Virus record (IMG/VR): IMGVR_UViG_3300028840_002431 | Span: 124,001-188,000 of that record | Direction: 5' to 3' (one strand) | DNA length: 64,000 bases | Part shown: piece by piece, positions 12,416 to 56,253 of the stretch | Layout of the letters: the number at the start of each line of letters is the position of its first letter | How positions within the stretch are numbered: position 1 is the first letter of the stretch | Made by a program: the position numbers and the translations under genes | Notes under the pieces: generated by a model | Seen by the model: only the letters and a program-made list of their open reading frames with translations | Database searches by the model: none | Told to the model about the DNA's origin: nothing

Positions 12416-12988
12416 GTGGTCAAAAAGAAGGACATACCGTTTTACCTAACATGCTTCATTGTCGGGGTTAGTGCCCCTCACACATTCAATTACGGTGTGG
12501 AGCACCCATGGAGAGCGATTCTCATCCTGTCCGGAGTCTTATTGATTTATGCCTTGATCGTCTACAGCCGGACGCTGTCAAAACAAGGGTTGGACGAAGA
12601 ACAAAAGTCGGAGGAGGAAACGGAGTCTGAAAACTATGCGACAGGGGAGGGAACCAGACGGGCAATCGATGAAGAATTTATGAGGGTTGCCGACAACACC
12701 TTGGGTCAACTCGCCGCCCTCGCGGAAGCCTCCGGGCGTTCAGAACCACACAGCGCCATCGGACCCACAGGGCCGGTAGGGCACCCAAACTACTCAGGTC
12801 TGGTGCCACTACAAGGTAGCGTTAGTGCCAGGGAATTGGGTTGCATCTGCCCGCACCCGAACGCCGCTGGTATCGGTCAAACCTTACCCAACCCTAGCTG
12901 CCCGATACACGGATCGAAAGAGCCGGAACCAAAACCAGAACCAGAGCCGGAACCAGAGAAAGATCTCTGGGACCATTTAAGAGGCTAA
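12416..12988 (+). CDS. Membrane protein with GCxCP...CPxHG domain and LWDHL tag
   Basis: Two hydrophobic segments; PE repeats; ends KDLWDHLRG. Confidence 0.65.
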   Translation: MVKKKDIPFYLTCFIVGVSAPHTFNYGVEHPWRAILILSGVLLIYALIVYSRTLSKQGLDEEQKSEEETESENYATGEGTRRAIDEEFMRVADNTLGQLAALAEASGRSEPHSAIGPTGPVGHPNYSGLVPLQGSVSARELGCICPHPNAAGIGQTLPNPSCPIHGSKEPEPKPEPEPEPEKDLWDHLRG

Positions 12989-13058
12989 GGCCGCCACCTT
13001 CCGGAGACGACCTCGTAACTCCTTCTACGCAGATGAGCTACCCAAGGATAACACAGAT

Positions 13059-13511
13059 ATGAAGACAAGCGAGCTATACCTAAAAACCAAAGGGTTTTTC
13101 GTCCACTTGTGTAACATTACAGGTATGCCCGTTCCACGTATCAGGGAACCCGAAGCCCCGGATACCTGTGATTTCACGAGCCATGAAGAAGTGCGGCTCA
13201 ACGTCGTGGGAGCCTACAACGTCACACCGGAACGTCACGCTGCCCACGTCTTTGGCCACTACCTGTGCGACCTTCACGAGTGGGGCAATAAAGAAGATCA
13301 CCCGATCTGCGATGAAATAGCTGACGCCATTGCCGACTTGTTAGACGGCCCGGAGGGGAAAGGCAGTTGTCCTTGTGAATGGACAGAACCATGTGACCCA
13401 CGGTGTACGTGTGTCCATCCGGTCTCAAGCGTCGGTTGTAAGCGATGCTGTCGCTACGGGAGTGACGAGCAACGGAAAGCCCAGGCCGAGCACCTAGTTA
13501 AACATGAATAA
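13059..13511 (+). CDS. Cys/His-rich hypothetical protein
   Basis: HxxxHxxxH and multiple Cys pairs. Confidence 0.6.
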   Translation: MKTSELYLKTKGFFVHLCNITGMPVPRIREPEAPDTCDFTSHEEVRLNVVGAYNVTPERHAAHVFGHYLCDLHEWGNKEDHPICDEIADAIADLLDGPEGKGSCPCEWTEPCDPRCTCVHPVSSVGCKRCCRYGSDEQRKAQAEHLVKHE

Positions 13512-13773
13512 AGACGAAGGACCCAAACTATCTGATGACCCTACCCCCGAAGAACTCAGGGCGTGGGTAGAATACTGGACCCGATGCCCGGCGTGTAAGA
13601 GTAAGCTATCGATGGCCGACGCGGCACTGGGGTATTGCTTCTGGTGCGGGGAGAGTCTGGAATGAGCAAAGTAACGCGGGAAGAACAGGAACGCCAGCGA
13701 CGGATGGAGCATATAGAGAAGCTGGCCAACCGGCGTGAAGAGTCCTATAGCTGGTCCAGATACCAGGAACTGA

Positions 13774-14247
13774 CATGGACGTGAAGAGGTGTATACTTCG
13801 GGCGTGAAAAGATCATGGACGTGAAGGTGTTTCAGGACGGCCGACTGCTTAGGGGTCAAGAAGAGGAAGTTGATTATTTACACAGAGATTCATGGACGTG
13901 AAGATAGAGCTTCATTTCGCCTTACAGATCATGGACGTGAAGGGAGTCCAGGTCCATCGAGATTACTGCCTTAAACAGAGTCGTCCGGGGATAAACGGGT
14001 TGACTTCACATCCCGAAAGCGAGCAAGACTACGGTCACTCGCTAAACTCCCCACGTGGGGAGAGTCCATGATCGAACCGGACGACTCTGTTTAGGGTAGT
14101 AAGAGCAGATCATGGATGTGAAGATCGGGATGACAACCGTAAGAGGGCCAACAGATCATGGGCGTGAAGAAAGACATAGGAATAGGGCCACACGAGATCA
14201 TGGGCGTGAAGGGTAACTTGATAAACTAACAAATCATGGGCGTGAAG
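13774..14247 (+). repeat. CRISPR-like repeat-spacer array, 8 x AGATCATGG[A/G][C/T]GTGAAG, no cas genes in window
   Basis: Copies at 13774-13786 (partial), 13810-13826, 13886-13903, 13926-13942, 14107-14123, 14153-14169, 14195-14211, 14231-14247; non-identical spacers of 23, 59, 22, 29, 25 and 19 bp. Confidence 0.85.
13963..14102 (+). ncRNA. Structured anti-repeat RNA embedded in the array
   Basis: 26-bp closing stem (13963-13988/14077-14102, two G-U), cUACGg tetraloop, split anti-repeat CTTCAC (14004-14009) + GTCCATGATC (14064-14073). Confidence 0.75.
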
Positions 14248-14281
14248 GGGTTACGAGGTTGGTAACTGTTAACAGTTTCGA

Positions 14282-14515
14282 GTGAGGGACCCGGCGATCG
14301 ACTGGACCAAGATCAAGGAACGACAGGACAATAGTCCTGAATGCCGCGACCACGAGGGCGTCTACCGACTGCTCAGCGGGCATCTGTATTACGACAGAGC
14401 GGGCAACCGGTCCCGTATCCTTAGCTTCTGTCTGGATGACCCGGAGCAAGGACCGGTTGTTATCGTGCCGATATTCCCGATCGGGGTAACGCTCTGGGAC
14501 TGTCTGACGACCTAA
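14282..14515 (+). CDS. Small protein with variant tag (TLWDCL)
   Basis: Ends VTLWDCLTT. Confidence 0.55.
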   Translation: MRDPAIDWTKIKERQDNSPECRDHEGVYRLLSGHLYYDRAGNRSRILSFCLDDPEQGPVVIVPIFPIGVTLWDCLTT

Positions 14516-14953
14516 CCCTTCTTGTCGTTCCGAGACAGTAGGATTCAGACCCACACGCCTACGAACGTTGGCGATGGGAATCCTTCCCTATAAAACCCGG
14601 TTTGTGCGGCAAACACGGCCACCATGGCCGTAAAGGCCGTTGTGGAACAACGAACAAACCGATCTCACTAAACACGCTCCGCTATCCCCGTCAACGTGGA
14701 TACGCAATAACCCTTCTGAAGCTTCTAGAGTAGCGTTTTCGCAGAAGAATACGCAGAAGAAAGATATAACCGAGCGATTCGATCGAACCCAAAGCAATGC
14801 AATCCGCCAATATGGTATTTATAGAACGCTTAAACACTTGCAACGACTCAAAGGAGCGTCCTATAGAGTTTAAATGCTGAGAGGTCGAACCAAAGCCGTG
14901 CAAAGCAATCGGTCCAACCTCTCGATTAACCACCCAACAGAAAGGTGATAACC

Positions 14954-15742
14954 ATGAAGGAAGATACCACCCAACCCGCTGTAGATCAAGACGAAGACGC
15001 TACAGAGAGCCAAGACGCCGCTGAAGAACAAAGCACCCCCGGCACCAAGAAGGTGCGCCATCAAGTGCTCAGTCTCCCGGAAGCTGTCGCGGCCATAAAG
15101 CTGCTAGTCAACTCGGGAGGGCCAGACTACAGCCTACAGGACGCTGCCGGTACTCTCGGGGGCAGTATCAATTCCGGCACCAACAAACAGAGGATGGCCA
15201 CCCTCGTGAGGTTCGGTTTTCTCGAAAGGTTGAAGGGGGGTGGTTGGAGGCTCACGAATAAGGGGCGCGTCGTCGCTGAGCGGCCTAACACCCCGGAGTT
15301 TTTCCACATTTGCCAAGAGGCTTTCGAAAAGGCCCCCCACTTCTCTGATATCGGCGCTCGTTTTAGCTGCCGTAAATACGGAGAGGACAACATGCTGCTT
15401 AGGAACTTTGTCCGTATTGACCTCAAGGTTCCTACTAAGAAGACCGTCTCCAAGATCGTCAATACGTACCTGGACTCCCGCAGGTTCTTGGACGGGCTTG
15501 GGGCCGAGCCTGAACACGCCGAAGAGCCAGAACAGCCACGCGAAACTCAAAGCGTGCCGGACGAAACCCCCCTTGTCCCATCCAACGGGAGCCACGCCGT
15601 GTTCCAAGCGGTGGTGGACGGCGCTGTCATAAAGAAGACAGCCGAGACCAAGGACGACCTCCCTCGCTCCGTTCACACCTTCATAGAAATGCTGCGTCTG
15701 GAATTCGCTGACGAACTGAGGGCGTACGCCGAGAGGGCGTAG
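14954..15742 (+). CDS. Winged-helix DNA-binding protein (DUF5343-like)
   Basis: SLPEAV...AAGTLG...NSG...MATLVRFGFLE...WRLTNKGR wHTH pattern. Confidence 0.55.
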   Translation: MKEDTTQPAVDQDEDATESQDAAEEQSTPGTKKVRHQVLSLPEAVAAIKLLVNSGGPDYSLQDAAGTLGGSINSGTNKQRMATLVRFGFLERLKGGGWRLTNKGRVVAERPNTPEFFHICQEAFEKAPHFSDIGARFSCRKYGEDNMLLRNFVRIDLKVPTKKTVSKIVNTYLDSRRFLDGLGAEPEHAEEPEQPRETQSVPDETPLVPSNGSHAVFQAVVDGAVIKKTAETKDDLPRSVHTFIEMLRLEFADELRAYAERA

Positions 15743-15758
15743 CCATTCTAACACGGTT

Positions 15759-15787
15759 CGACCCACCCGGTTGTTTCGGGTGGGTCG
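15759..15787. terminator. Perfect 11-bp hairpin, probable terminator
   Basis: CGACCCACCCG-gttgttt-CGGGTGGGTCG just after a stop codon. Confidence 0.5.
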
Positions 15788-15840
15788 TCGCGTACGCGAT
15801 CGGTGTACGAAATCCAGAAGCCTTGCGCACCGGAGGGAGA

Positions 15841-16356
15841 ATGCCTATTCCAAAGCCAAAGGACACGATCCTCACAGAAGAACAATGGGAGTCGGTTCGT
15901 CGTTTGTCTACTTTAGAACAGGAGATTGCCAGGGACTACTACCGTAACGATTTAACTCAAGCCCAGATAGGGCTACGGCATGGCATGACGCAAGCGGCAG
16001 TATCGACCCGACTGTCAAAAATTAACGAACGTTTGGAGTGGGTACAGCACCTGCCGCCCATACCCACAAGCGACCTCACAGAATTGCTAACGCCCGAATT
16101 CAATTCTTCCACACCGATACTGACAACCTTGTACGAAACGACGTGCCAAAGTGAAACGGCTGTCAGGATGGGTTGCTCGCAGGGGAAAGTCCGGCACCAA
16201 CTCCACAAGGCGGTGGACAAACTCGAAACCCTCGTTGAATCAGGCCGCACTGACCTCGAAGAGGTGCTACGAGGGTTGAGAACGATCCGAGATAGGGACG
16301 GAACACTCCACACCTTCGACCACCCGTCGAGGCGAGTTGATGAAATAAACCCTTAG
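15841..16356 (+). CDS. Sigma-70 region-4-like tandem HTH protein
   Basis: LSTLEQEI...LTQAQIGLRHGMTQAAVSTRL and a second HTH QSETAVRMGCSQGKVRHQL. Confidence 0.7.
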   Translation: MPIPKPKDTILTEEQWESVRRLSTLEQEIARDYYRNDLTQAQIGLRHGMTQAAVSTRLSKINERLEWVQHLPPIPTSDLTELLTPEFNSSTPILTTLYETTCQSETAVRMGCSQGKVRHQLHKAVDKLETLVESGRTDLEEVLRGLRTIRDRDGTLHTFDHPSRRVDEINP

Positions 16357-16404
16357 GTTTTACCCCGTAGCCGGTGTAGTATCTGGGTAAGAGGAGGTAA
16401 AGCC

Positions 16405-17733
16405 TTGGGTTCATTTAACGCTACCTGTGCCATATCCGGACTGCCTATCGGGCCAGGAGACCCCGTCCGGTACCTGCTACTGTCCGGAAATTACAGCGAA
16501 AGAGGGCCGGTCTGTATGCCCTTCGATAAGTGGGAACCAAGGACCTTCCCGATCCGGGCCGAGTATAACGACTACGGTTCGATCGAGAACCCCGAAGAGG
16601 GTATCGGCCCTCAGTTATGGCTCGACGGCCTGAAACGGGACCTCGTCCCACAGGGGTGGGGTGATAACAGTTGCCATGACGTGCCGACCGACCCCGACAT
16701 GACGTGGGGCCAATTGTTAGAAGCCCTGTGGGAGGGCCGGGTATTAATCGACCCCAAGAAAGCCAGGGGCATGTCACTCTTGGACCGGGTCCTGGAAGCA
16801 AGCGACAAGATTCTGCTCGAAAAGGCCCGCAAGAAACGGTTGGACCCGGAGGTGCCGGAAGGCGTGCCGACACTGGAACGGATTAAGAACGTCCTGTCAG
16901 GGCACCCGGCGTTCAACGGCTGGGGTAATGACGGCTTCATGGTGGACGAGACCGAACGAGCCGTGGTCCGGGTACGCTGGCACGGCCAGGATCGTATCGA
17001 CCACCTGGAGACGGCCAGAGACCTACTGAACGAAGGCTACGCGGCCCTGTTAGTCTCAGGGAGCGGCAACTATTCCGACGAGGCAGAGGTGTTGGTCTTT
17101 GCCAAACCGGGCGTACGTTGTGGCCGTGGGATGCACCACGAGGCTTATTACGCACCCCGGCCGGTCGCGCCCATGATGATCCGCGAGGACGTGTGGCAAG
17201 CCCTCCTCAAGCTGGACACCGTGGAACGAAGTCTTTGGGGCAGCGAGGAGATGGGTTCCAAAACAGACCGGAGTCTGGGCGCTTACAAGAAAGCGGTCCG
17301 TGATCTGTACGGTCGAAGGCTGAAACAACAAGAGGTCCTCGAAGCTACCGCAAAGAGCGACCTTGAGGTCGCCATCGAGGCCGTGAAAACCAGCGGTGTG
17401 TACCCGAAACCTAATAGCCTGACCCACGCCCTGGAAGATCCGCTGACCCTGAGTTTCGGGTGGGGAGGCCACTGGGAACTGTTAGTTGACAAGGCGCTCC
17501 CCGCCGAAGAGATAAGCGACACCCTCGACGCCGTAGCCGAGTCACTCTACGTGTGTACGGCTCTGATGTGGGTCCGATACCTGTGGCAGCCGTCGCATAC
17601 GGTAGGGCCTCAGTTTGGTTCCTTCAACATGCACGAGGCTTACCACAAGGCCATGGCCCAGATAGCCTACGAACGGCACGAAGAAGACCGAAAGCAGTAC
17701 GAGGACGAGATAGACGAGGAGGACGCGGAGTAA
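16405..17733 (+). CDS. Phage hypothetical protein (MGSFNxTCxxSGL type)
   Basis: 442-aa ORF; GAGGAGG RBS; YNDYG motif. Confidence 0.75.
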   Translation: MGSFNATCAISGLPIGPGDPVRYLLLSGNYSERGPVCMPFDKWEPRTFPIRAEYNDYGSIENPEEGIGPQLWLDGLKRDLVPQGWGDNSCHDVPTDPDMTWGQLLEALWEGRVLIDPKKARGMSLLDRVLEASDKILLEKARKKRLDPEVPEGVPTLERIKNVLSGHPAFNGWGNDGFMVDETERAVVRVRWHGQDRIDHLETARDLLNEGYAALLVSGSGNYSDEAEVLVFAKPGVRCGRGMHHEAYYAPRPVAPMMIREDVWQALLKLDTVERSLWGSEEMGSKTDRSLGAYKKAVRDLYGRRLKQQEVLEATAKSDLEVAIEAVKTSGVYPKPNSLTHALEDPLTLSFGWGGHWELLVDKALPAEEISDTLDAVAESLYVCTALMWVRYLWQPSHTVGPQFGSFNMHEAYHKAMAQIAYERHEEDRKQYEDEIDEEDAE

Positions 17734-18458
17734 TGCTCGACGCAAAACTGAGACACGTCTACGACAACGGGCTTGACTTGGCTTCCTGGGGTGAGGCTAA
17801 CGCTCCTGACGAACGGCTGATTTACCGTAATGGTGTTGACTCCCAGCTTCGTAAAATCGCGGCCGTTGCGACCCTCCTGCACGACTTCGGCGCTTACGAC
17901 TTACCCCCGCTGGTCGTGGGGAGCCACACGAGCAAATCAGTCAAGCTCCCGGTGACGTGCTTCCGGTTCGCGCCCTACGAACAAGTCGAAGCCTACGTCT
18001 TCGTCCGCGACAACTTCCACAACATCAAGGCCGTGGTGGTTTCTGACTCCCCGATCCACATGCCGTATCACGTGGTCCACATGGAGTGGAGTCCGGAACG
18101 GTACGAAGAAGAACTCAAACGCTACAGCAAATACCACGAGAACGACACGCCAGAAGAAGCTCAGAAACGGCGAGTGTTGATGGCCACAGACGACTGGTTC
18201 AAGGATTGGTCCAGTGGAGTCCTTCTGAGAAAGGACGGGCGCATCTACCGGACCGGCAGTTACCAATCCGTGTACTGCGAAGGCATTGATACGCCGCTAA
18301 TGGCCGAAAACGCCGTGTTCAAGCCATACGAGGACGGTGACAAGAGCTTCGTGTGTGAGGTTGATTCTTACACTATCGTTGCGCGGATCTTGGAGCATGT
18401 TATCGACTCCCTCGAACGAGAACGCTACAAGAGGAACCAGGAAAGCTCCGACGCCTAG
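17733..18458 (+). CDS. Hypothetical protein
   Basis: TAATG overlap; VVGSHTSKSVKLPV...VRDNFH motif. Confidence 0.7.
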   Translation: MLDAKLRHVYDNGLDLASWGEANAPDERLIYRNGVDSQLRKIAAVATLLHDFGAYDLPPLVVGSHTSKSVKLPVTCFRFAPYEQVEAYVFVRDNFHNIKAVVVSDSPIHMPYHVVHMEWSPERYEEELKRYSKYHENDTPEEAQKRRVLMATDDWFKDWSSGVLLRKDGRIYRTGSYQSVYCEGIDTPLMAENAVFKPYEDGDKSFVCEVDSYTIVARILEHVIDSLERERYKRNQESSDA

Positions 18459-18481
18459 ACTTTTGATAAGCCAGTAGGGGT

Positions 18482-18958
18482 ATGAACCCCCGAAAAGCAT
18501 TTGTGAACAGTCTGCTAAAAGAAGCCGCCCGGCGAAAGACCGCCAGCACCCCGGCAGAGGACATCGGAGAGGCGATCAGCCTACTCGATTACTTACCGAA
18601 CGCGGCGGCGGCTTGGCACGAGGCCCACGCGAAAAACCGAGAACTCGCCAAGGCGAACGCCAAGAAGGTTCGACAAGCCGTTGACCTTCTCAGCAATGTT
18701 CTCTCTTCCATGCCAAAGTCCATGCAATATATGGTCGTCGGCCTCGACAACAAGACCTATACCTTCAAGGACGTGGATGACCTCATCGAGGAACTGAAAT
18801 CCCGTGGCATCCGTCATACAGGGTTTCAGGAGGGGAGGCACCTCAGGCCGGAACTGCAAGGGCAGCCGAAGTTCGACAAGCTTCTAGGTCCCATGCATGG
18901 CGGTGGTGGTAAGGTTCGATACGAGACCCAGAAAGTCTACGACGTGCTGAGTCGCTGA
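18482..18958 (+). CDS. NPRKA-leader protein
   Basis: Starts MNPRKAFVNSLLKEA. Confidence 0.7.
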   Translation: MNPRKAFVNSLLKEAARRKTASTPAEDIGEAISLLDYLPNAAAAWHEAHAKNRELAKANAKKVRQAVDLLSNVLSSMPKSMQYMVVGLDNKTYTFKDVDDLIEELKSRGIRHTGFQEGRHLRPELQGQPKFDKLLGPMHGGGGKVRYETQKVYDVLSR

Positions 18959-37062: not shown

Positions 37063-37287
37063 ATGGCGCTGGACCAACGGATACCTGCCCCTGGCTACAT
37101 CGTTTGCGTCAAATGCGACCACCTCTGGGTCACGTACTATACGAGTCCGACTCTCCTTTGCGAGCGTTGCAAGACCAATCCCCTGTGTTGGGCCTGTCCC
37201 TCTGATACCCTCATATGCCCTGGCTCGTGTGAGCATCAACGGGAGCCGGGGACCTCTCCTCTAACCCTCTGGGACCACGTGAGGTAG
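37063..37287 (+). CDS. NPLCWxCP zinc-finger family, LWDH-tagged
   Basis: CxxC..W..CxRCxxNPLCWACP..ICPGxCxH..TLWDHV. Confidence 0.7.
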   Translation: MALDQRIPAPGYIVCVKCDHLWVTYYTSPTLLCERCKTNPLCWACPSDTLICPGSCEHQREPGTSPLTLWDHVR

Positions 37288-37639
37288 CCATTTGGACCAT
37301 CTAGAAGCCATCCTCCGTAGGCTCCACTCCCTGGAACGTGCCAACAAGCGTCTGACACGGCGCGTCTCGACGCTGGAGAATCAAGTAGCCGTGGCCCCTC
37401 CCTGTCCAGGCCCTACCGCTTTTGACTCCTCCATCGAGGTTGTCTGCCCTACCTGCAAGGCCAAGCCCTTCGAGCCATGTGTCACTGCCTCTGGTTCCAA
37501 GCCGGGCACTGTCCTTCATTACATTCATTCTCCCCGTGGCGATTTGTTCCGGCGTGCCAAGCGGGCTAAACGTAAGAAGTGATACTAAATCCGGCGCGTG
37601 CTCGACGCTTCCCGGCCGTTCGGTGTAACATTTGATAAT

Positions 37640-37882
37640 ATGCTCCCTCCCGTTTGTTTCGAATGCGGTCGTGTCCATGTCGCTGTGAGAAAAGCTCCCC
37701 GTGACAGCATGGGTCTTTGCCAGCGTTGTCTTGGTAATCCTCATTGCTGGGACTGCCCTGACGATGCTCTGGCCACGGGTATTATTTGCCCCGGTCCCGG
37801 CCCTGGTGTGTGCGACCACGTACGGAGTAGCTTCACTCTATGGCGGGCCTTAAAATCAACTTCCGACGCGGGGCGGCCATGA
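37640..37882 (+). CDS. NPLCWxCP zinc-finger family
   Basis: CQRCLGNPHCWDCP; TLWRAL; SDAGRP end. Confidence 0.7.
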   Translation: MLPPVCFECGRVHVAVRKAPRDSMGLCQRCLGNPHCWDCPDDALATGIICPGPGPGVCDHVRSSFTLWRALKSTSDAGRP

Positions 37883-38258
37883 GTAACCGTTCTCCCATCC
37901 CCTATTGCCTTCACTGCAAGGAATGGCTCCGTCCGGAACAACTCGTGGAGCATTACCCAGACACTCCGGGGACCGAATATCTTTGCGCCCTTTGTTTCAA
38001 GCGGCTCCCTTTGGCCAGTAAGCGTCCCAGTGTCCTGGGGCACGTCAGGTGCCCTCGATGTGGGTCCATGGCGTCCGAACAGTGGAGGAATGCTACCGTC
38101 GATATCGGCGGTAGCAATACCCTGACCTTTTTCGAGTGCGGCACGAGGGTTCTCGACTTCCCTCTGGGCCTGAACCATCCACATGCGGTTCATCATGGCA
38201 GCGGTTGTATCAGCACCACTCTCTGGGACCATATTACTAACTCCGACGGGGGTCCCTG

Positions 38259-38516
38259 ATGTCTCTTTGCGCACAATGCGGCCAAGTCTGGACCACCCCC
38301 GCTCATTGGAGAGGTCTCCATGTCTGGGCAGACGCTCCGGTGAAAGGCGAGCGTCGATGCTGGCGATGTCAGGGCGACCCCTTGTGTCTGGACTGCCCCG
38401 CCGCAATCCTGATATCCACAATCTCCCACACCTGTCCGTCCGAACCTGAGGAGTGTTTCCACCGGGCCAAGCCATTGACATTATGGGGTGCCATTTCCGA
38501 CGCGGGGCGGCTATGA
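38259..38516 (+). CDS. NPLCWxCP zinc-finger family
   Basis: CWRCQGDPLCLDCP; TLWGAI. Confidence 0.7.
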   Translation: MSLCAQCGQVWTTPAHWRGLHVWADAPVKGERRCWRCQGDPLCLDCPAAILISTISHTCPSEPEECFHRAKPLTLWGAISDAGRL

Positions 38517-38688
38517 AACTATACGTACGTGAAGGTTGGTTGACTGGCTTCGTAACCGGGGCCTTCATAGTTGCTGCCACCACACTCATGAGTGAAAAGC
38601 ATTGGGTCCCGGCGACCGTCTTCATGGTCCTCTCCCTTGGGATAATGGCCCTCGAACTCTATGTAGCTAACTCCGACGCGGGGCGGCC

Positions 38689-39108
38689 ATGAAGTCTCCT
38701 CACTCATATTGGTCATGCCTCAGTGAGGACGAGAAGAAGTTCATCCTCTCTTTGGCCGCTAATCTCTCCAAGACGCTTGGCATCGAGCACCCTCCCGGAG
38801 TTAATATTATCAAGTACGCCATGACCTCACTTATCCAGGACGTTCACTCCCACCGGGACATCAAGACTCAAAAGCCTCCCGCTCCGGATGGTGTTCTCGC
38901 CTGTCTCAAGTGCTCCCAGGTTTGGGTCCCGGCCGGGACTCTCTACTGCCAGCGGTGTGAGGGTAATCCCCTGTGTTGGGACTGCCCTGCCCAAAACCCT
39001 GACTGGCGGACCGGGCATTCCCTCGTGTGCCGTGGCTCATGCGACGACCAGAAGAAAACTATTTGGGAGCACTTGATAAAATCAACTACCGACTTGGAAT
39101 CGGTTTAA
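38689..39108 (+). CDS. NPLCWxCP zinc-finger family with extra N-terminal domain
   Basis: CQRCEGNPLCWDCP; TIWEHL. Confidence 0.7.
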   Translation: MKSPHSYWSCLSEDEKKFILSLAANLSKTLGIEHPPGVNIIKYAMTSLIQDVHSHRDIKTQKPPAPDGVLACLKCSQVWVPAGTLYCQRCEGNPLCWDCPAQNPDWRTGHSLVCRGSCDDQKKTIWEHLIKSTTDLESV

Positions 39109-39574
39109 CCCAGAGAGTGATTAATGGCTTGTTCCCTCTGTAACGGCACCAAGCGTATCAAGATGCAGTTCTCCTTACCTACCGAGAGTGAGGCGGCCCG
39201 GCTTGCCGAACTCGACCCCGACACTCCCATATACCGTGACCCCGTGGCCATGGGCCTTACCCTTCCCAAGCCGTTACGCGAGGACTTGGAGCAAGGTTGG
39301 GACAGGGAGTGCCCCCGTTGCTCTTCCGACGCGGGGCGGCCATGACCATCTATTGCTACAACCGGTTCAAGGAGGATGGCGTTGGTCCTAATATTTACCA
39401 CGCTCTGAAAGCGACCTTCATGAGCACGGGCGACAGTAATCGAACCCACTGTGGCGTGGATCTCCCGTCTTCCGTTATCCGTGTTACCGAGTGGCCGCCC
39501 AAGGGGATGCGTAAGTGCAAGCGATGTTTCCGTGACCTTTGGGACCATATTATCAACTCCGAAGCGGGGCGATC

Positions 39575-39841
39575 ATGACCGGTATCGTTTGGCAAGACAT
39601 GGTAGTCGCGGGCGCTAACCTGCTATTCGCCTACTCCATTCTCACTCAAGTCGTCCATGGCTTCCGGGAGAAGAAGGGCTTCATCCTCCTACGTACCTCA
39701 GGGCCGACCACTCTGGGTTTGTACGCCATGGCTGTCGCTTTCTTCACCATCCCCCTCTTCTACTCCGCCTCAGTGGCCGCGTTCAATGCGACCCTCTGGC
39801 TTCTCCTCTTCATCCAACGGCTCATTTACGAGAAGGCGTAG
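39575..39841 (+). CDS. Three-TM membrane protein (PQ-loop/SemiSWEET-like)
   Basis: Three hydrophobic helices; 'SILTQV' at the PQ position. Confidence 0.5.
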   Translation: MTGIVWQDMVVAGANLLFAYSILTQVVHGFREKKGFILLRTSGPTTLGLYAMAVAFFTIPLFYSASVAAFNATLWLLLFIQRLIYEKA

Positions 39842-39849
39842 TTGATAAA

Positions 39850-40068
39850 ATGCCTCTGTGTTCTCGTTGCGAACGTATCTGGGTCCCCAAGAGGGCCGTG
39901 ACCGAACACGGCGATTACGTTTGCCTCCGTTGCAAGAGCGACCCCTGGTGTTGGGACTGCCCTGCCAAGTCGGTCCCGCCTTTCCAAACCGGGCACATCT
40001 GTAAGGACGGCTGTGTTCACCGCCGCCCGCCCCTGACCCTCTGGGCCGCCCTTTCGGGGGGCGACTGA
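39850..40068 (+). CDS. NPLCWxCP zinc-finger family
   Basis: CLRCKSDPWCWDCP; TLWAAL. Confidence 0.7.
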   Translation: MPLCSRCERIWVPKRAVTEHGDYVCLRCKSDPWCWDCPAKSVPPFQTGHICKDGCVHRRPPLTLWAALSGGD

Positions 40069-53858: not shown

Positions 53859-54812
53859 ATACTAAGGAGTTAGAATGGAAACCCTGACAAGATACTTTGT
53901 CGGCCTGAGCATCTTTCTCGCGGTGGGTATCACCGTGTTCGCTTTTGCGCCGGAAGAAGACTCCAGCCACTATGTCGGCTTCGGTTGTGCCCTCGTGGGT
54001 GTGATAATAGTTACCACGGCCTTCTTTGAATTCTACGTCAGAGAGATGAAGACTAAAGAAAAAGAGAAGGAGGCAAGGCGACGTTGATGCCTGTCTGTTT
54101 GGTGTTAGATGCCAACTTGCCAACAGTGTGCCGGGTGGTTCCCCGTCCAGAATAGATCCTTTGAGCAGTTCTTGTGCCCCGCGTGTTACCAGGATGTGTT
54201 GCGTCATCTGGCGGAACGCGCCCGGCAGATCATGGACGTAAGGCATTGTAGGGTTTGCGGGCGCACTTTGACGGAGTCGTCTCATGTGTGCTCCGCCGAC
54301 TGTGCTCTAACACTACGCAGAATTATTGCTGACGGTCGTCAGTTGGTTCAGTACGGCACGCGCACGGACTTTCTTCTCTGGGCCAGAGAACAGGGTGGAT
54401 GGAGTGAGGACGAAATTACACCTTTCGATCACCCGAGGGTTTGGGAACAAGACAGAACTGAGGCTCACCGCCTCTTCGATGACTGGGCCGGACGCACCGA
54501 AACGAACCCGATCACTCCGGATGTGCGCGTAGAAGAATGGCCTAACGTCAACATCTGCCACATCTGCCCGGCCCAGAACACGGACATGTGCTCTGCCGAG
54601 TGTGAGCACCGGAATCAGATCTTCCAACGTGTAGGCCCTGTGCCCCCGTCAGGGCCGACCTATCCAGGGGGCCGACCCGACGACAGTCGGCCAACAGACG
54701 AACAGGCCGAACTTCTCAAGGCTTTTGAGGATTTGGACAAACCCGACAAAGACCTCTGGGACCACCTCAAGAAGGAGTGACCCAGCGGTGTAGTATCTGG
54801 TAGGGTGTTAGG

Positions 54813-55070: not shown

Positions 55071-56253
55071 GTAAATTAGGCCCAACAGATAAACACCCCA
55101 ACGGCAAGCTCAACAAGGACGACGAAGGAGAGATTCGTTTCGCCGTTGGTTCTCACGATGGTAATGTCATCCTGGACTTCGGTTCACCGGTCGCGTGGGT
55201 GGGGATGCCGCCACCGTTGGCCCGCCAACTGGCCGCGATGTTGATTCGACACGCCAATGCTATTGAAGGACATTGATGCCAGACAAGCCGCTTTTGAGTA
55301 GGAGGGACGCTTACAGAATCCTTGGGTTCGACGAAAACGAGCGTTTCCGTAACTACGAGCTTGAGCACGAGCTTGAGAGTCAATGCGATCTGGAAGAAGG
55401 CGAGATTATTATAGGCGAATGGTGCCCGTTCAACGGTATATACTGCAAGTTCTTCGACGTAGCTCCGATCAAGGCCCTGGAAGAAGCGAAAAGAAACAGA
55501 GAGGGCCGACCCCAAGGAAATTAACATCCCCGCCATGGTCAAGAAGATCGACAAAGAGATCGACAGACGAAAGCCTCTGGACCTTTGGGATCATCTACGA
55601 GAAAGCCCCGATGAAGGTAAGATCTTCACATCACGTCAAATCCGGATGGCCAAGGGGGTACCACAATAAAACATGTTCTCCGATGCCGTTGTAAAAGAGG
55701 GCCGTCTACTTTTAGAGGCTAAGAACCTCCCTGGTTTTTACTCGTGGTGCAAGGCGCATCTCCCACGTTTGAATCAGGCCAAGATCCGGGAGATATTCGA
55801 CGACCCTCGATTGTGGGAGAAGCAGACAGGGAGTATAGATAACCGTCCTCTCAGGTACTACTACGACCTCCTACGCCGGTACAAACGGCTCGTGGAAGCA
55901 AAGAACCTCTGGGACCACCTGAGAGGGAACTGATGCCCTTCTGCTACGAGTGTGGGAGAGAATTCGCGGACGGCGGGGGTGTCGTGGTCAACGCGCTCCC
56001 CGGAGTCGTTTTTTGCTCAGCTACCTGTGTGGCTGAAAACACCCGACCATGGCCCAAATGCGAGGTGTGTGAACAACGGTTTCCCCCAACCACAGGTGTG
56101 GGTGGCGACATATGCGACCGATGCTACTCCCGAATTAATGTGAGAATAAAGCCCAAGGGCGCTAAGAAGCGCAAAGTGGACAAAAACCTCTGGGACCACC
56201 TGAAAGACTCTTAGGTTTCTCGAAGCTGGTTCGTACACCTAACGGAGAAGACG

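What the first reader, a model, noticed from the sequence alone, without database searches (positions are those of the whole stretch)
13963..14102. Embedded 140-nt RNA with a split anti-repeat: tracr-like scaffold, array-processing ribozyme or RT template
Seen: a 26-bp closing stem whose only two non-Watson-Crick pairs are G-U on the + strand. Inside it, CUUCAC (14004-14009) sits in the loop of a CGGG/CCCG hairpin. Next come hairpin AGCGAG/CUCGCU capped by a cUACGg (UNCG) tetraloop, hairpin CUCCCC/GGGGAG, and single-stranded GUCCAUGAUC (14064-14073). Joined, CUUCAC + GUCCAUGAUC is the exact reverse complement of GAUCAUGGAC-GUGAAG. Both core repeat variants (GGGC, GGAU) remain pairable by G-U wobble, which points to RNA-RNA pairing. 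Inference: two guide arms clamp each repeat around a structured core, like a trans-acting ribozyme or group II EBS1/EBS2. Alternatively, a reverse transcriptase jumping the hairpins would synthesise the repeat (cf. DRT2 template jumping). It lacks the hammerhead, pistol, twister and HDV consensus as far as I can tell by eye.
Basis: partly seen in the sequence, partly recalled or inferred. Interest (0 to 1): 0.9.

Follow-up and report, generated by a model that had tools for sequence, protein, structure and literature searches.

The report
Phage antisense RNA among its targets
A huge phage carries a very stable 140-base folded RNA inside a cluster of eight short repeats, with two exposed stretches that together match the repeat exactly; it most resembles the self-regulating antisense RNA of phage P1 but is unrelated to it in sequence.

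Summary
Eight same-strand copies of a 16-nt core (GATCATGGRYGTGAAG, 13771-14247) flank a 140-nt element (13963-14102). The element has a 26-bp closing stem and three inner hairpins, and folds far better than shuffles (-78.2 kcal/mol, z -10). CUUCAC in a hairpin loop and GUCCAUGAUC before the closing stem together form the exact split complement of the repeat. This occurs in 3 of 300,000 shuffles and in none of 12,664 other windows.

No Rfam family matches. No Cas, reverse transcriptase, transposase or RNA-binding protein is found in 64 kb. The locus exists only as identical copies of one ~416-kb phage, so covariation cannot be tested.

The tracr, ribozyme and RT-template readings have no support. 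The closest working analogue is the P1/P7 c4 antisense RNA. I checked this on the P1 record: one arm lies in a hairpin loop, the other in the strand before the closing stem, and bipartite targets lie upstream and downstream on the same transcript. The Rfam C4 models do not match this locus, so it is an analogue, not a member.

Best reading (about 0.4): a transcript-embedded antisense regulator with eight targets. Rivals are DNA iterons, a protein sponge, a guide for an unknown effector, and an inert insertion.

The parts
13770..13797 (+). Sigma-70-like promoter candidate (CTGACA, 16 nt, TATACT). It overlaps repeat 1 and would start an RNA near 13804.
   Evidence: 10 of 12 consensus positions. 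This is a consensus match only, not shown to function.
13771..13786 (+). Repeat 1, degenerate at its 5' end (TGACATGGACGTGAAG). The stop codon of the 40-aa ORF 13662-13784 lies inside it.
   Evidence: gene call.
13811..13826 (+). Repeat 2, a perfect 16/16 complement to the two arms.
13887..13903 (+). Repeat 3, with a 1-nt insertion (GATTCATGGACGTGAAG).
13927..13942 (+). Repeat 4, a perfect match. Its UGGAC (13932-13936) can also pair in cis with GUCCA (13946-13950) or GUCCAU (13952-13957) in the spacer that follows.
13963..14102 (+). 140-nt structured RNA element. Closing stem 13963-13988 / 14077-14102. Hairpin 13996-14015 carries arm 1 (CUUCAC, 14004-14009) in its loop. Hairpin 14018-14043 has a UACG tetraloop. 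Hairpin 14047-14062 is a perfect 16-bp palindrome at the DNA level. Arm 2 is GUCCAUGAUC (14064-14073).
14108..14123 (+). Repeat 5 (GGAT variant; U-G wobble with arm 2).
14154..14169 (+). Repeat 6 (GGGC variant; G-U wobble).
14196..14211 (+). Repeat 7 (GGGC variant).
14232..14247 (+). Repeat 8 (AATC... GGGC variant). It ends 35 nt before the GTG of the next ORF.
14282..14515 (+). 77-aa ORF directly downstream of the array. It is an orphan and a candidate regulated gene.
   Evidence: Gene call; no family.
14954..15742 (+). 262-aa orphan protein after a 430-nt non-coding stretch. A helix-helix-helix-strand-strand pattern hints at a winged helix, but the model is unreliable.
   Evidence: no homologue other than itself; pLDDT 43.7.
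15841..16356 (+). Protein with a sigma-70 region 4 domain; a candidate downstream regulator of the same phage-specific block.
   Evidence: (PF04545, E 4.4e-11).
54226..54239 (+). Solitary 14-nt copy of the extended repeat (CAGATCATGGACGT) inside gene 54109-54780. It may be a trans target or may be chance.
   Evidence: My own estimate of about 0.002 exact 14-mers expected per strand is not a tool result.

Best explanation
The locus encodes a + strand antisense RNA embedded in the transcript it acts on. It works like the c4 RNA of phages P1/P7 and the CI RNA of P4.

Proposed steps:
1. The array region is transcribed rightward, either with the flanking + strand genes or from the promoter-like site at 13770-13797.
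2. The 140-nt domain folds on its own.
3. Its 26-bp terminal helix is a plausible RNase III substrate that would release the domain.
4. Its two exposed arms pair with the 3' and 5' halves of any of the eight repeats. The arms are CUUCAC in a hairpin loop and (GUCC)AUGAUC next to the closing stem. Four repeats lie upstream and four downstream. Each pairing forms a bipartite 6+10 bp clamp.
5. Pairing on the same or sister transcripts would then lower expression of the downstream phage-specific block (77-aa ORF, 262-aa protein, sigma-region-4 protein). This could happen by termination, cleavage or occlusion. The upstream copies would act as competing sites.

Shown: the structure, arm accessibility, exact and non-random complementarity, the target layout, and topological identity with P1 c4.

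Inferred: transcription, processing, pairing in vivo, and the regulatory outcome.
For: - Fold stability and strand asymmetry: -78.2 (z -10) on + versus -66.6 on -. All three non-Watson-Crick pairs are G-U on +.
- All flanking genes are on the + strand.
- The arms are unpaired.
- Arm duplex energies are -5.6 and -15.0 kcal/mol, comparable with P1 b':b at -8.6 and a':a at -7.3.
- The split complement has p of about 1e-5.
- Repeat polymorphisms are wobble-compatible.
- The array flanks are unusually unstructured, so they are accessible.
- P1 control: the record annotates a1/b1, then c4 (77 nt), then a2/b2, then icd on one strand. In c4, b' sits in a hairpin loop and a' in the single strand before the 3' side of the closing stem. 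That is the arrangement found here.
- The array, the RNA and the next three genes form a block that is absent in the nearest relatives, which is consistent with a self-contained regulatory module.
Against: - No transcription data.
- No relatives, so there is no covariation.
- The Rfam C4 and c4-a1b1 models do not match.
- The RNA is 140 nt with a 26-bp stem, against 77 nt for c4, whose acceptor-like stem cut by RNase P I cite from the literature.
- There are eight contiguous targets rather than two gapped pairs.
- The last repeat ends 35 nt before the next start codon and does not cover a ribosome-binding site.
- No clear intrinsic terminator follows the array.
- No antirepressor-like gene is recognisable downstream.
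Confidence: 0.4

Rival explanations
1. DNA-level element. The eight repeats are binding sites (iterons) for a phage DNA-binding protein, serving as a replication origin, partition site, packaging site or titration array. The 140-bp palindrome is a central cruciform or bend, and its inverted half-sites are bound in the opposite orientation.
For: - There are 4 + 4 direct repeats around a central palindrome, in a 1.1-kb non-coding stretch.
- Each repeat contains GATC.
- The variable dinucleotide lies between two constant blocks, as between half-sites.
- The next sizeable gene may encode a winged-helix protein, but the model is weak.
- One inner hairpin is a perfect 16-bp DNA palindrome.
Against: - Spacings of 36-46 bp are not helically phased.
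- There is no AT-rich unwinding region.
- No initiator, ParA/ParB or terminase is recognisable nearby.
- An inverted site split by 54 bp of hairpins is awkward for duplex-DNA recognition.
- G-U-only mismatches, a UNCG tetraloop and an 11.6 kcal/mol strand asymmetry point to RNA.
Confidence: 0.17
2. Guide RNA for an unknown effector, or a catalytic RNA. The two arms position each repeat for cleavage, ligation or modification, processing the array into units as tracrRNA with RNase III does. Alternatively the RNA is a trans-acting ribozyme.
For: - Two-arm clamp geometry around a structured core.
- The match is exact.
- Split anti-repeats occur in type V tracrRNAs (established knowledge, not tested here).
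- The spacers differ from one another, as in guide arrays.
Against: - No Cas, TnpB, IscB, Nop-domain, IS110 or RT protein is present, and no ORF exceeds 442 aa in 64 kb.
- No ribozyme family matches.
- Repeats are short and irregularly spaced.
- The spacers match nothing in about 3 Mb of fetched sequence or in the window.
Confidence: 0.12
3. Protein sponge. The array is a CsrB/RsmZ-like decoy RNA that titrates a host or phage RNA-binding protein. The big hairpin only stabilises or processes the transcript.
For: - Five of eight repeats (UCAUGGAYGU) fit the published CsrA/RsmE site consensus (A/U)CANGGANG(U/A), cited from memory. The GGA sits in a potential 3-bp hairpin loop (sequence).
- Bacterial arrays with CAUGGAUGUGAAG in covarying hairpin loops turned up in the scans (Colwellia and others).
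- The array flanks are unstructured.
Against: - The three best-conserved repeats have GGG instead of the essential GGA.
- By my own count, GGA is not enriched outside the repeats.
- No terminator is present.
- This reading does not explain the exact split anti-repeat.
- The similarity to the Colwellia arrays was imposed by the search pattern.
- No CsrA-like ORF lies in the window.
Confidence: 0.1
4. Inert or selfish insertion. The 140-bp element is a MITE-like palindromic element, with 23-bp terminal inverted repeats flanked by TA...TA, that landed in one spacer. The array is a decaying tandem duplication without function.
For: - The gap between repeats 4 and 5 is 181 nt. Subtracting 140 gives 41, which is the array period.
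- TA lies at 13964-13965 and at 14100-14101, just outside a 23-bp inverted repeat. This resembles Correia or IS630/Tc1-type MITEs (established knowledge).
Against: - The element is single-copy in the 416-kb genome, and its end sequence is paired nowhere else in IMG/VR.
- No similar element occurs in about 3 Mb of fetched loci.
- A random insertion would not carry the exact split complement of the host array (p about 1e-5).
Confidence: 0.08

Closest known systems
c4 antisense RNA of phages P1/P7 with its a1/b1 and a2/b2 targets (Rfam RF01695 and RF03163, clan CL00128); CI RNA of satellite phage P4
   Same: - The RNA lies inside the operon transcript it regulates.
- It has a terminal closing stem.
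- Its 5' arm is in a hairpin loop and its 3' arm is in the single strand just before the 3' side of the closing stem.
- The two arms are colinear with a bipartite target.
- Target copies lie both upstream and downstream on the same strand.
- One inner hairpin is capped by a UNCG tetraloop.
- A small ORF follows (icd, 73 aa, in P1; 77 aa here).

All of this was verified on the P1 record.
   Different: - No covariance-model match.
- 140 nt with a 26-bp stem against 77 nt for c4, which has an acceptor-like stem processed by RNase P (literature).
- The arms are 54 nt apart, with two extra hairpins between them, against 6 nt in c4.
- The target halves are contiguous (6+10), against 7 and 8 nt separated by 7-22 nt.
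- Eight targets against two pairs.
- The last target does not overlap a ribosome-binding site.
- No ant, icd or kilA homologues.
- The host is a ~416-kb phage.
tracrRNA:repeat pairing in type II/V CRISPR-Cas
   Same: An RNA encoded next to or inside an array carries an anti-repeat. Long duplexes are likely RNase III substrates. Split anti-repeats are known in some type V systems (literature).
   Different: No cas genes. Repeats are 16-20 nt and irregularly spaced. The anti-repeat lies inside a closed multi-hairpin domain. No spacer matches.
Correia-type and other TA-flanked MITEs
   Same: The element is about 140 bp, has ~23-26-bp terminal inverted repeats and flanking TA, and forms an RNase III-type hairpin when transcribed.
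   Different: It is single-copy, and it carries sequence complementary to the array it sits in.
CsrB/RsmZ protein-sponge RNAs
   Same: Multiple GGA-containing motifs occur on one unstructured transcript, and five repeats fit the binding consensus.
   Different: Three repeats lack GGA. The conserved unit is 16-20 nt. There is no terminator. An embedded anti-repeat has no counterpart in these RNAs.

Membership tests
C4 antisense RNA family (Rfam RF01695 / clan CL00128) | Match to the family covariance model | tested here: not met
   No C4 or c4-a1b1 hit at E<=10 in 1.5 kb or in 201 nt. Positive control: the P1 locus scores 68.8 and 51.0 bits.
C4 antisense RNA family (Rfam RF01695 / clan CL00128) | Two short exposed arms (one in a hairpin loop, one in the junction strand) colinear with a bipartite target | tested here: met
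   for this RNA; for P1 c4.
C4 antisense RNA family (Rfam RF01695 / clan CL00128) | Target copies upstream and downstream of the RNA gene on the same strand | tested here: met
   Four repeats lie on each side. P1 annotation: a1/b1, c4, a2/b2.
C4 antisense RNA family (Rfam RF01695 / clan CL00128) | RNA of about 77-90 nt with an acceptor-like stem, matured by RNase P | tested here: not met
   This RNA is 140 nt with a 26-bp stem. ARAGORN finds nothing tRNA-like. Processing itself cannot be tested here.
C4 antisense RNA family (Rfam RF01695 / clan CL00128) | Downstream target overlaps the ribosome-binding site of icd, followed by antirepressor genes | tested here: not met
   Repeat 8 ends 35 nt before the GTG at 14282. 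No Ant, KilA or Icd-like family is found.
CRISPR-Cas tracrRNA | Adjacent cas effector gene | tested here: not met
   The longest ORF in 64 kb is 442 aa. No Cas family appears.
CRISPR-Cas tracrRNA | Regular array of 23-50-nt repeats with spacers of uniform length | tested here: not met
   The core is 16-20 nt, and start-to-start spacings are 40, 77, 39, 181, 46, 42, 36.
CRISPR-Cas tracrRNA | Anti-repeat complementary to the repeat | tested here: met
   Exact 6+10 split complement.
Small self-cleaving ribozymes (hammerhead, twister, pistol, hatchet, HDV, hairpin) | Match to a family model or catalytic core | tested here: not met
   No Rfam hit at the gathering threshold or at E<=10. Catalysis itself cannot be tested here.
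Retron / DRT template RNA | Adjacent reverse transcriptase gene | tested here: not met
   No RVT family among 122 ORFs scanned.
CsrB/RsmZ-type sponge | Many GGA motifs in loops, Rho-independent terminator, cognate CsrA | tested here: inconclusive
   Five of eight repeats carry GGA in a consensus context and three carry GGG. There is no terminator and no CsrA ORF in the window. The host is unknown.
MITE (TA-flanked, Correia / IS630-Tc1 type) | Terminal inverted repeats with TA duplication | tested here: met
   A 23-bp inverted repeat is flanked by TA at 13964-13965 and 14100-14101. A TA flank is weak evidence because TA is itself a palindrome.
MITE (TA-flanked, Correia / IS630-Tc1 type) | Multiple dispersed copies | tested here: not met
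   The end 15-mer occurs as a pair only at this locus in the 416-kb and 173-kb contigs. There is no other copy in the window or in the fetched loci. Host genomes could not be scanned for it.
Iteron-type origin / centromere | Phased repeats next to an initiator or partition gene, with an AT-rich region | tested here: not met
   Spacing is unphased, GC is about 0.53, and no Rep, ParA or ParB family is found. Protein binding cannot be tested here.

The most novel reading that the evidence does not exclude
The 140-nt RNA is a protein-independent, or unknown-protein-dependent, guide or catalyst. It clamps each repeat with two arms and cuts, joins or modifies the array transcript there. That would be a Cas-free array-processing system of a huge phage, with the spacers serving as functional units.
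Probability: 0.1. Interest if true: 0.85.

Novelty: new variant of a known kind. Interest (0 to 1): 0.55.

Why it matters
If the c4-like reading holds, an RNA-only regulatory logic would extend beyond P1, P7 and P4-type elements. In that logic, an antisense RNA is cut out of the transcript it controls and has targets on both sides of its gene. This locus would be an unrelated, larger, eight-target version in an uncultivated ~416-kb phage, placed upstream of a sigma-factor-like gene. That would suggest convergent evolution of the design, and it would give a handle on gene timing or immunity in huge phages, whose regulation is almost unknown. Its short, exactly defined arm-target pairs could be reprogrammed and tested with compensatory mutants in ordinary E. 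coli reporter systems.

Tried and rejected
Searches for known families and similar DNA:
- Rfam over the whole window, over 1.5 kb and over 201 nt: nothing.
- ARAGORN: nothing.
- BLAST of the locus and of 15 kb around it against GenBank phages: nothing.

Repeat and element scans:
- The single-repeat scan of IMG/VR gave only chance single hits plus this phage.
- The two-repeat pattern in IMG/VR found only this phage plus one coding repeat.
- The same pattern in GTDB genomes and JGI metagenomes found this phage (L346, identical) and unrelated tandem or coding repeats.
- A scan for the element's end sequence found no second copy.
- All eight independent contigs compared are 100% identical over 2 kb, so there is no variation to exploit.

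Searches for related RNAs and arrays:
- A covariance model of the RNA found nothing in 537 kb of related huge-phage loci.
- k-mer array scans of the window and of 40 related loci found only collagen-like coding repeats.

Protein neighbours:
- The 262-aa protein has no homologue.
- The 442-aa protein has more than 300 homologues in huge phages, but with no synteny.
- Contigs with relatives of the 150-aa protein lack the block.
- The contig of the closest 442-aa relative also lacks it.
- The AlphaFold model of the 262-aa protein is too poor to search with (pLDDT 43.7), and the PDB sequence search found nothing.

Other readings tested:
- Alternative genetic codes do not explain the short ORFs.
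- Reading the repeats as starts of mini-ORFs (ATG GAC GTG AAG) was rejected: the eight ATGs fall in three different frames (my count), and no Shine-Dalgarno-like motif of the kind seen before real genes precedes them.
- Spacer matches are at chance level only.
- Short anti-repeat fragments are not generally enriched in the locus: 10 observed against about 9 expected.

Full report
**Source.** The window belongs to an uncultivated huge phage. The same sequence lies on IMG/VR contigs of 416,539 and 173,051 bp, and the adjacent gene is carried by 12 contigs in the protein collection. Eight independently fetched loci are 100% identical over 13000-15000. The window is packed with small ORFs of unknown function. 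The longest is 442 aa, and alternative genetic codes do not change that picture. From about 8 to 30 kb the genes run on the + strand.

**Observation.**
- The arms 13963-13988 and 14077-14102 form a 26-bp helix with 24 Watson-Crick pairs.
- The two exceptions are G-U and U-G on the + strand.
- The + strand folds to -78.2 kcal/mol (z -10.0), the - strand to -66.6 (z -8.0).
- Inside the helix lie three hairpins. CGGG/CCCG has CUUCAC in its loop. AGCGAG/CUCGCU is capped by a C-UACG-G tetraloop. CUCCCC/GGGGAG is the third.
- They are followed by GUCCAUGAUC.
- One detail needs correcting. GUCC is mostly paired with GGAU at 13989-13992 (unpaired probability about 0.3). AUGAUC and CUUCA are open (0.8-1.0).

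**Is it more than chance?**
- The 15-nt repeat pattern has 9 matches in 64 kb against 0.37 expected, and 8 of them form this one cluster, all on the + strand.
- A colinear split complement of the 16-nt core, at any split point, appeared in 3 of 300,000 shuffles of the 88-nt interior. It appeared in none of 12,664 real 88-nt windows elsewhere.
- The complementarity stops exactly at the ends of the 16-nt core.
- The only polymorphisms inside the core of well-formed repeats are A to G opposite U and C to U opposite G. Both keep pairing (-14.4 and -13.7 versus -15.0 kcal/mol). I estimate that would happen by chance roughly one time in four to ten, so it is weak support.
- Short anti-repeat fragments are not generally enriched in the locus.

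**Anatomy of the array.**
- The core is GATCATGGRYGTGAAG, with a weaker A-CA extension on the 5' side.
- Start-to-start spacings are 40, 77, 39, 181, 46, 42 and 36 nt, with unrelated spacers.
- The 181-nt gap minus the 140-nt element is 41 nt, which is the array period. The element therefore occupies one spacer, with four repeats on each side.
- The left four repeats are the GGAC type, an exact match to the arms. The right four are GGAT or GGGC.
- The stop codon of a 40-aa ORF lies in repeat 1. A sigma-70-like promoter (10 of 12) overlaps repeat 1 and would start an RNA near 13804.
- The array flanks fold no better than shuffles (z 0 to +1.6). Only the 140-nt domain is a robust structure within the 531-nt region.

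**Searches for relatives and families.**
- No Rfam family matches at any threshold tried. There is no tRNA or tmRNA and no similar DNA in GenBank phages.
- Repeat-pair scans of IMG/VR, GTDB genomes and JGI metagenomes returned only this phage plus unrelated tandem or coding repeats.
- A covariance model of the RNA found nothing in 537 kb of loci from related huge phages.
- The element's terminal sequence occurs as a pair only here, so it is single-copy in the 416-kb genome.
- The nearest relatives I could reach are contigs carrying homologues of the upstream 150-aa gene or of the downstream 442-aa gene. They lack the block that holds the array, the RNA, the 77-aa ORF, the 262-aa protein and the sigma-region-4 protein.
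- Covariation, the decisive test, therefore cannot be run on current data.

**Neighbourhood.** I scanned 122 ORFs: the neighbours with Pfam, PHROGs and NCBIfam, and the rest with Pfam only.
- No Cas, TnpB or IscB.
- No reverse transcriptase, transposase or recombinase.
- No RNase III, CsrA or Hfq.
- No Rep or Par protein.
- The 262-aa protein downstream has no homologue, and its AlphaFold model is unusable.
- The next gene carries a sigma-70 region 4 domain.

**What it works like.** The layout is an antisense RNA inside a transcript, with short exposed arms and target copies on both sides of its gene. That is the design of the immI region of phage P1. I checked this with tools rather than relying on memory.
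- The P1 record annotates a1 (7 nt) and b1 (8 nt), then the 77-nt c4 RNA, then a2 and b2, then icd (73 aa) and ant, all on one strand.
- In c4, the complement of b2 lies in a hairpin loop. The complement of a1/a2 lies in the single strand just before the 3' side of the terminal stem. Another hairpin carries a UUCG tetraloop.
- The RNA here has the same topology. Its 5' arm is in a hairpin loop and its 3' arm is next to the closing stem. The arms are colinear with the target, and the arm energies are comparable.
- It is not a member of that family. The Rfam C4 and c4-a1b1 models score 68.8 and 51.0 bits on P1 but give nothing here.
- Other differences: it is about twice as long and has a 26-bp stem, which suits RNase III rather than RNase P (inference). 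There are two extra hairpins between the arms. The target halves are contiguous. There are eight targets. None overlaps a ribosome-binding site.
- That c4 blocks icd and ant expression is stated in PMC8198154. RNase P maturation of c4 and the P4 CI/seqA/seqC system are cited from my own knowledge of the literature.

**Best explanation and rivals.** My best reading (about 0.4) is a transcript-embedded antisense regulator that pairs with the flanking repeats and controls the phage-specific block downstream. The rivals are:
- DNA iterons around a central palindrome (0.17). The unphased spacing, the lack of any partner gene and the RNA-type features argue against it.
No effector and no catalytic motif were found.
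- A CsrA-type sponge (0.10). Five repeats fit the binding consensus but three have GGG, and this reading leaves the anti-repeat unexplained.
- A TA-flanked MITE-like insertion without function (0.08). It is single-copy, and it carries the complement of the array it sits in.
- An RT template is very unlikely: there is no reverse transcriptase, and the repeats are interspersed.

**Verdict.** The feature is real and clearly non-random. It is probably an RNA-level regulator, and it is a new variant of a known design rather than a new class. It is known from a single phage lineage, with no expression or comparative data. Interest is moderate (0.55).

Noticed in passing
window 11866-56206 (at least 26 copies, e.g. 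12959-12983, 54748-54772, 55901-55925): A dispersed 20-25-nt repeat (CTCTGGGACCACCTGA-like) lies at the 3' ends of many small + strand genes. It encodes a shared C-terminal peptide, (K/N)(D/N)LWDHL(K/R). This could be a common tag or sorting signal of a large gene family in this phage.
   Followed up: partly
window 37159-39964 and 37860-39578: There are five copies of a Cys-rich coding motif (CxRCxxxPxCWxCP type). There are also five copies of a 23-nt sequence (CTTCCGACGCGGGGCGGCCATGA) ending in a start codon, which suggests a paralogous gene cluster with a shared 5' region.
   Followed up: no
window 14877-14921 (- strand): A 15-bp hairpin is much more stable on the - strand (131-nt context: -48.2 kcal/mol, z -4.9) than on the + strand (-28.1, z -1.5). 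It lies just upstream of the 262-aa gene start and may be an antisense RNA or a - strand terminator.
   Followed up: partly
window 54226-54239: A solitary 14-nt copy of the extended repeat (CAGATCATGGACGT) sits in frame inside gene 54109-54780, a zinc-finger-like protein that ends with the LWDHL motif. It may be a trans target of the RNA or may be chance.
   Followed up: partly
L199:6590-6870, L219, L252, L271 (Colwellia genomes and metagenome contigs); L254, L278, L294, L304, L333: These loci hold tandem ~50-nt units with CAUGGAUGUGAAG in the loop of a hairpin whose stem covaries between lineages (GCUGC/GCAGC, GUCAC/GUGAC, GUCCC/GGGAC). Each unit has a second GGA motif, and the L199 array follows a terminator. 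They look like CsrB-type sponge RNAs and are not in Rfam.
   Followed up: partly
window 16405-17733: This 442-aa protein has more than 300 homologues, mostly on contigs of 200-470 kb, so it is a marker of huge phages. Its N-terminus is invariant (MGSF..TC..SGLPI) and its function is unknown. Only the N-terminus matches phrog_5960, and some homologues carry PF28363.
   Followed up: partly
window 13511-18482 compared with L367/L368 and L371: The stretch downstream of the 150-aa gene varies between relatives. In relatives its homologue is followed by a 253-aa gene, by a Dam-like methylase, or by other genes.
   Followed up: yes
window 14047-14062: The third inner hairpin (CTCCCCACGTGGGGAG) is a perfect 16-bp DNA palindrome with a CACGTG core. 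It could also serve as a binding site for a dimeric protein.
   Followed up: no
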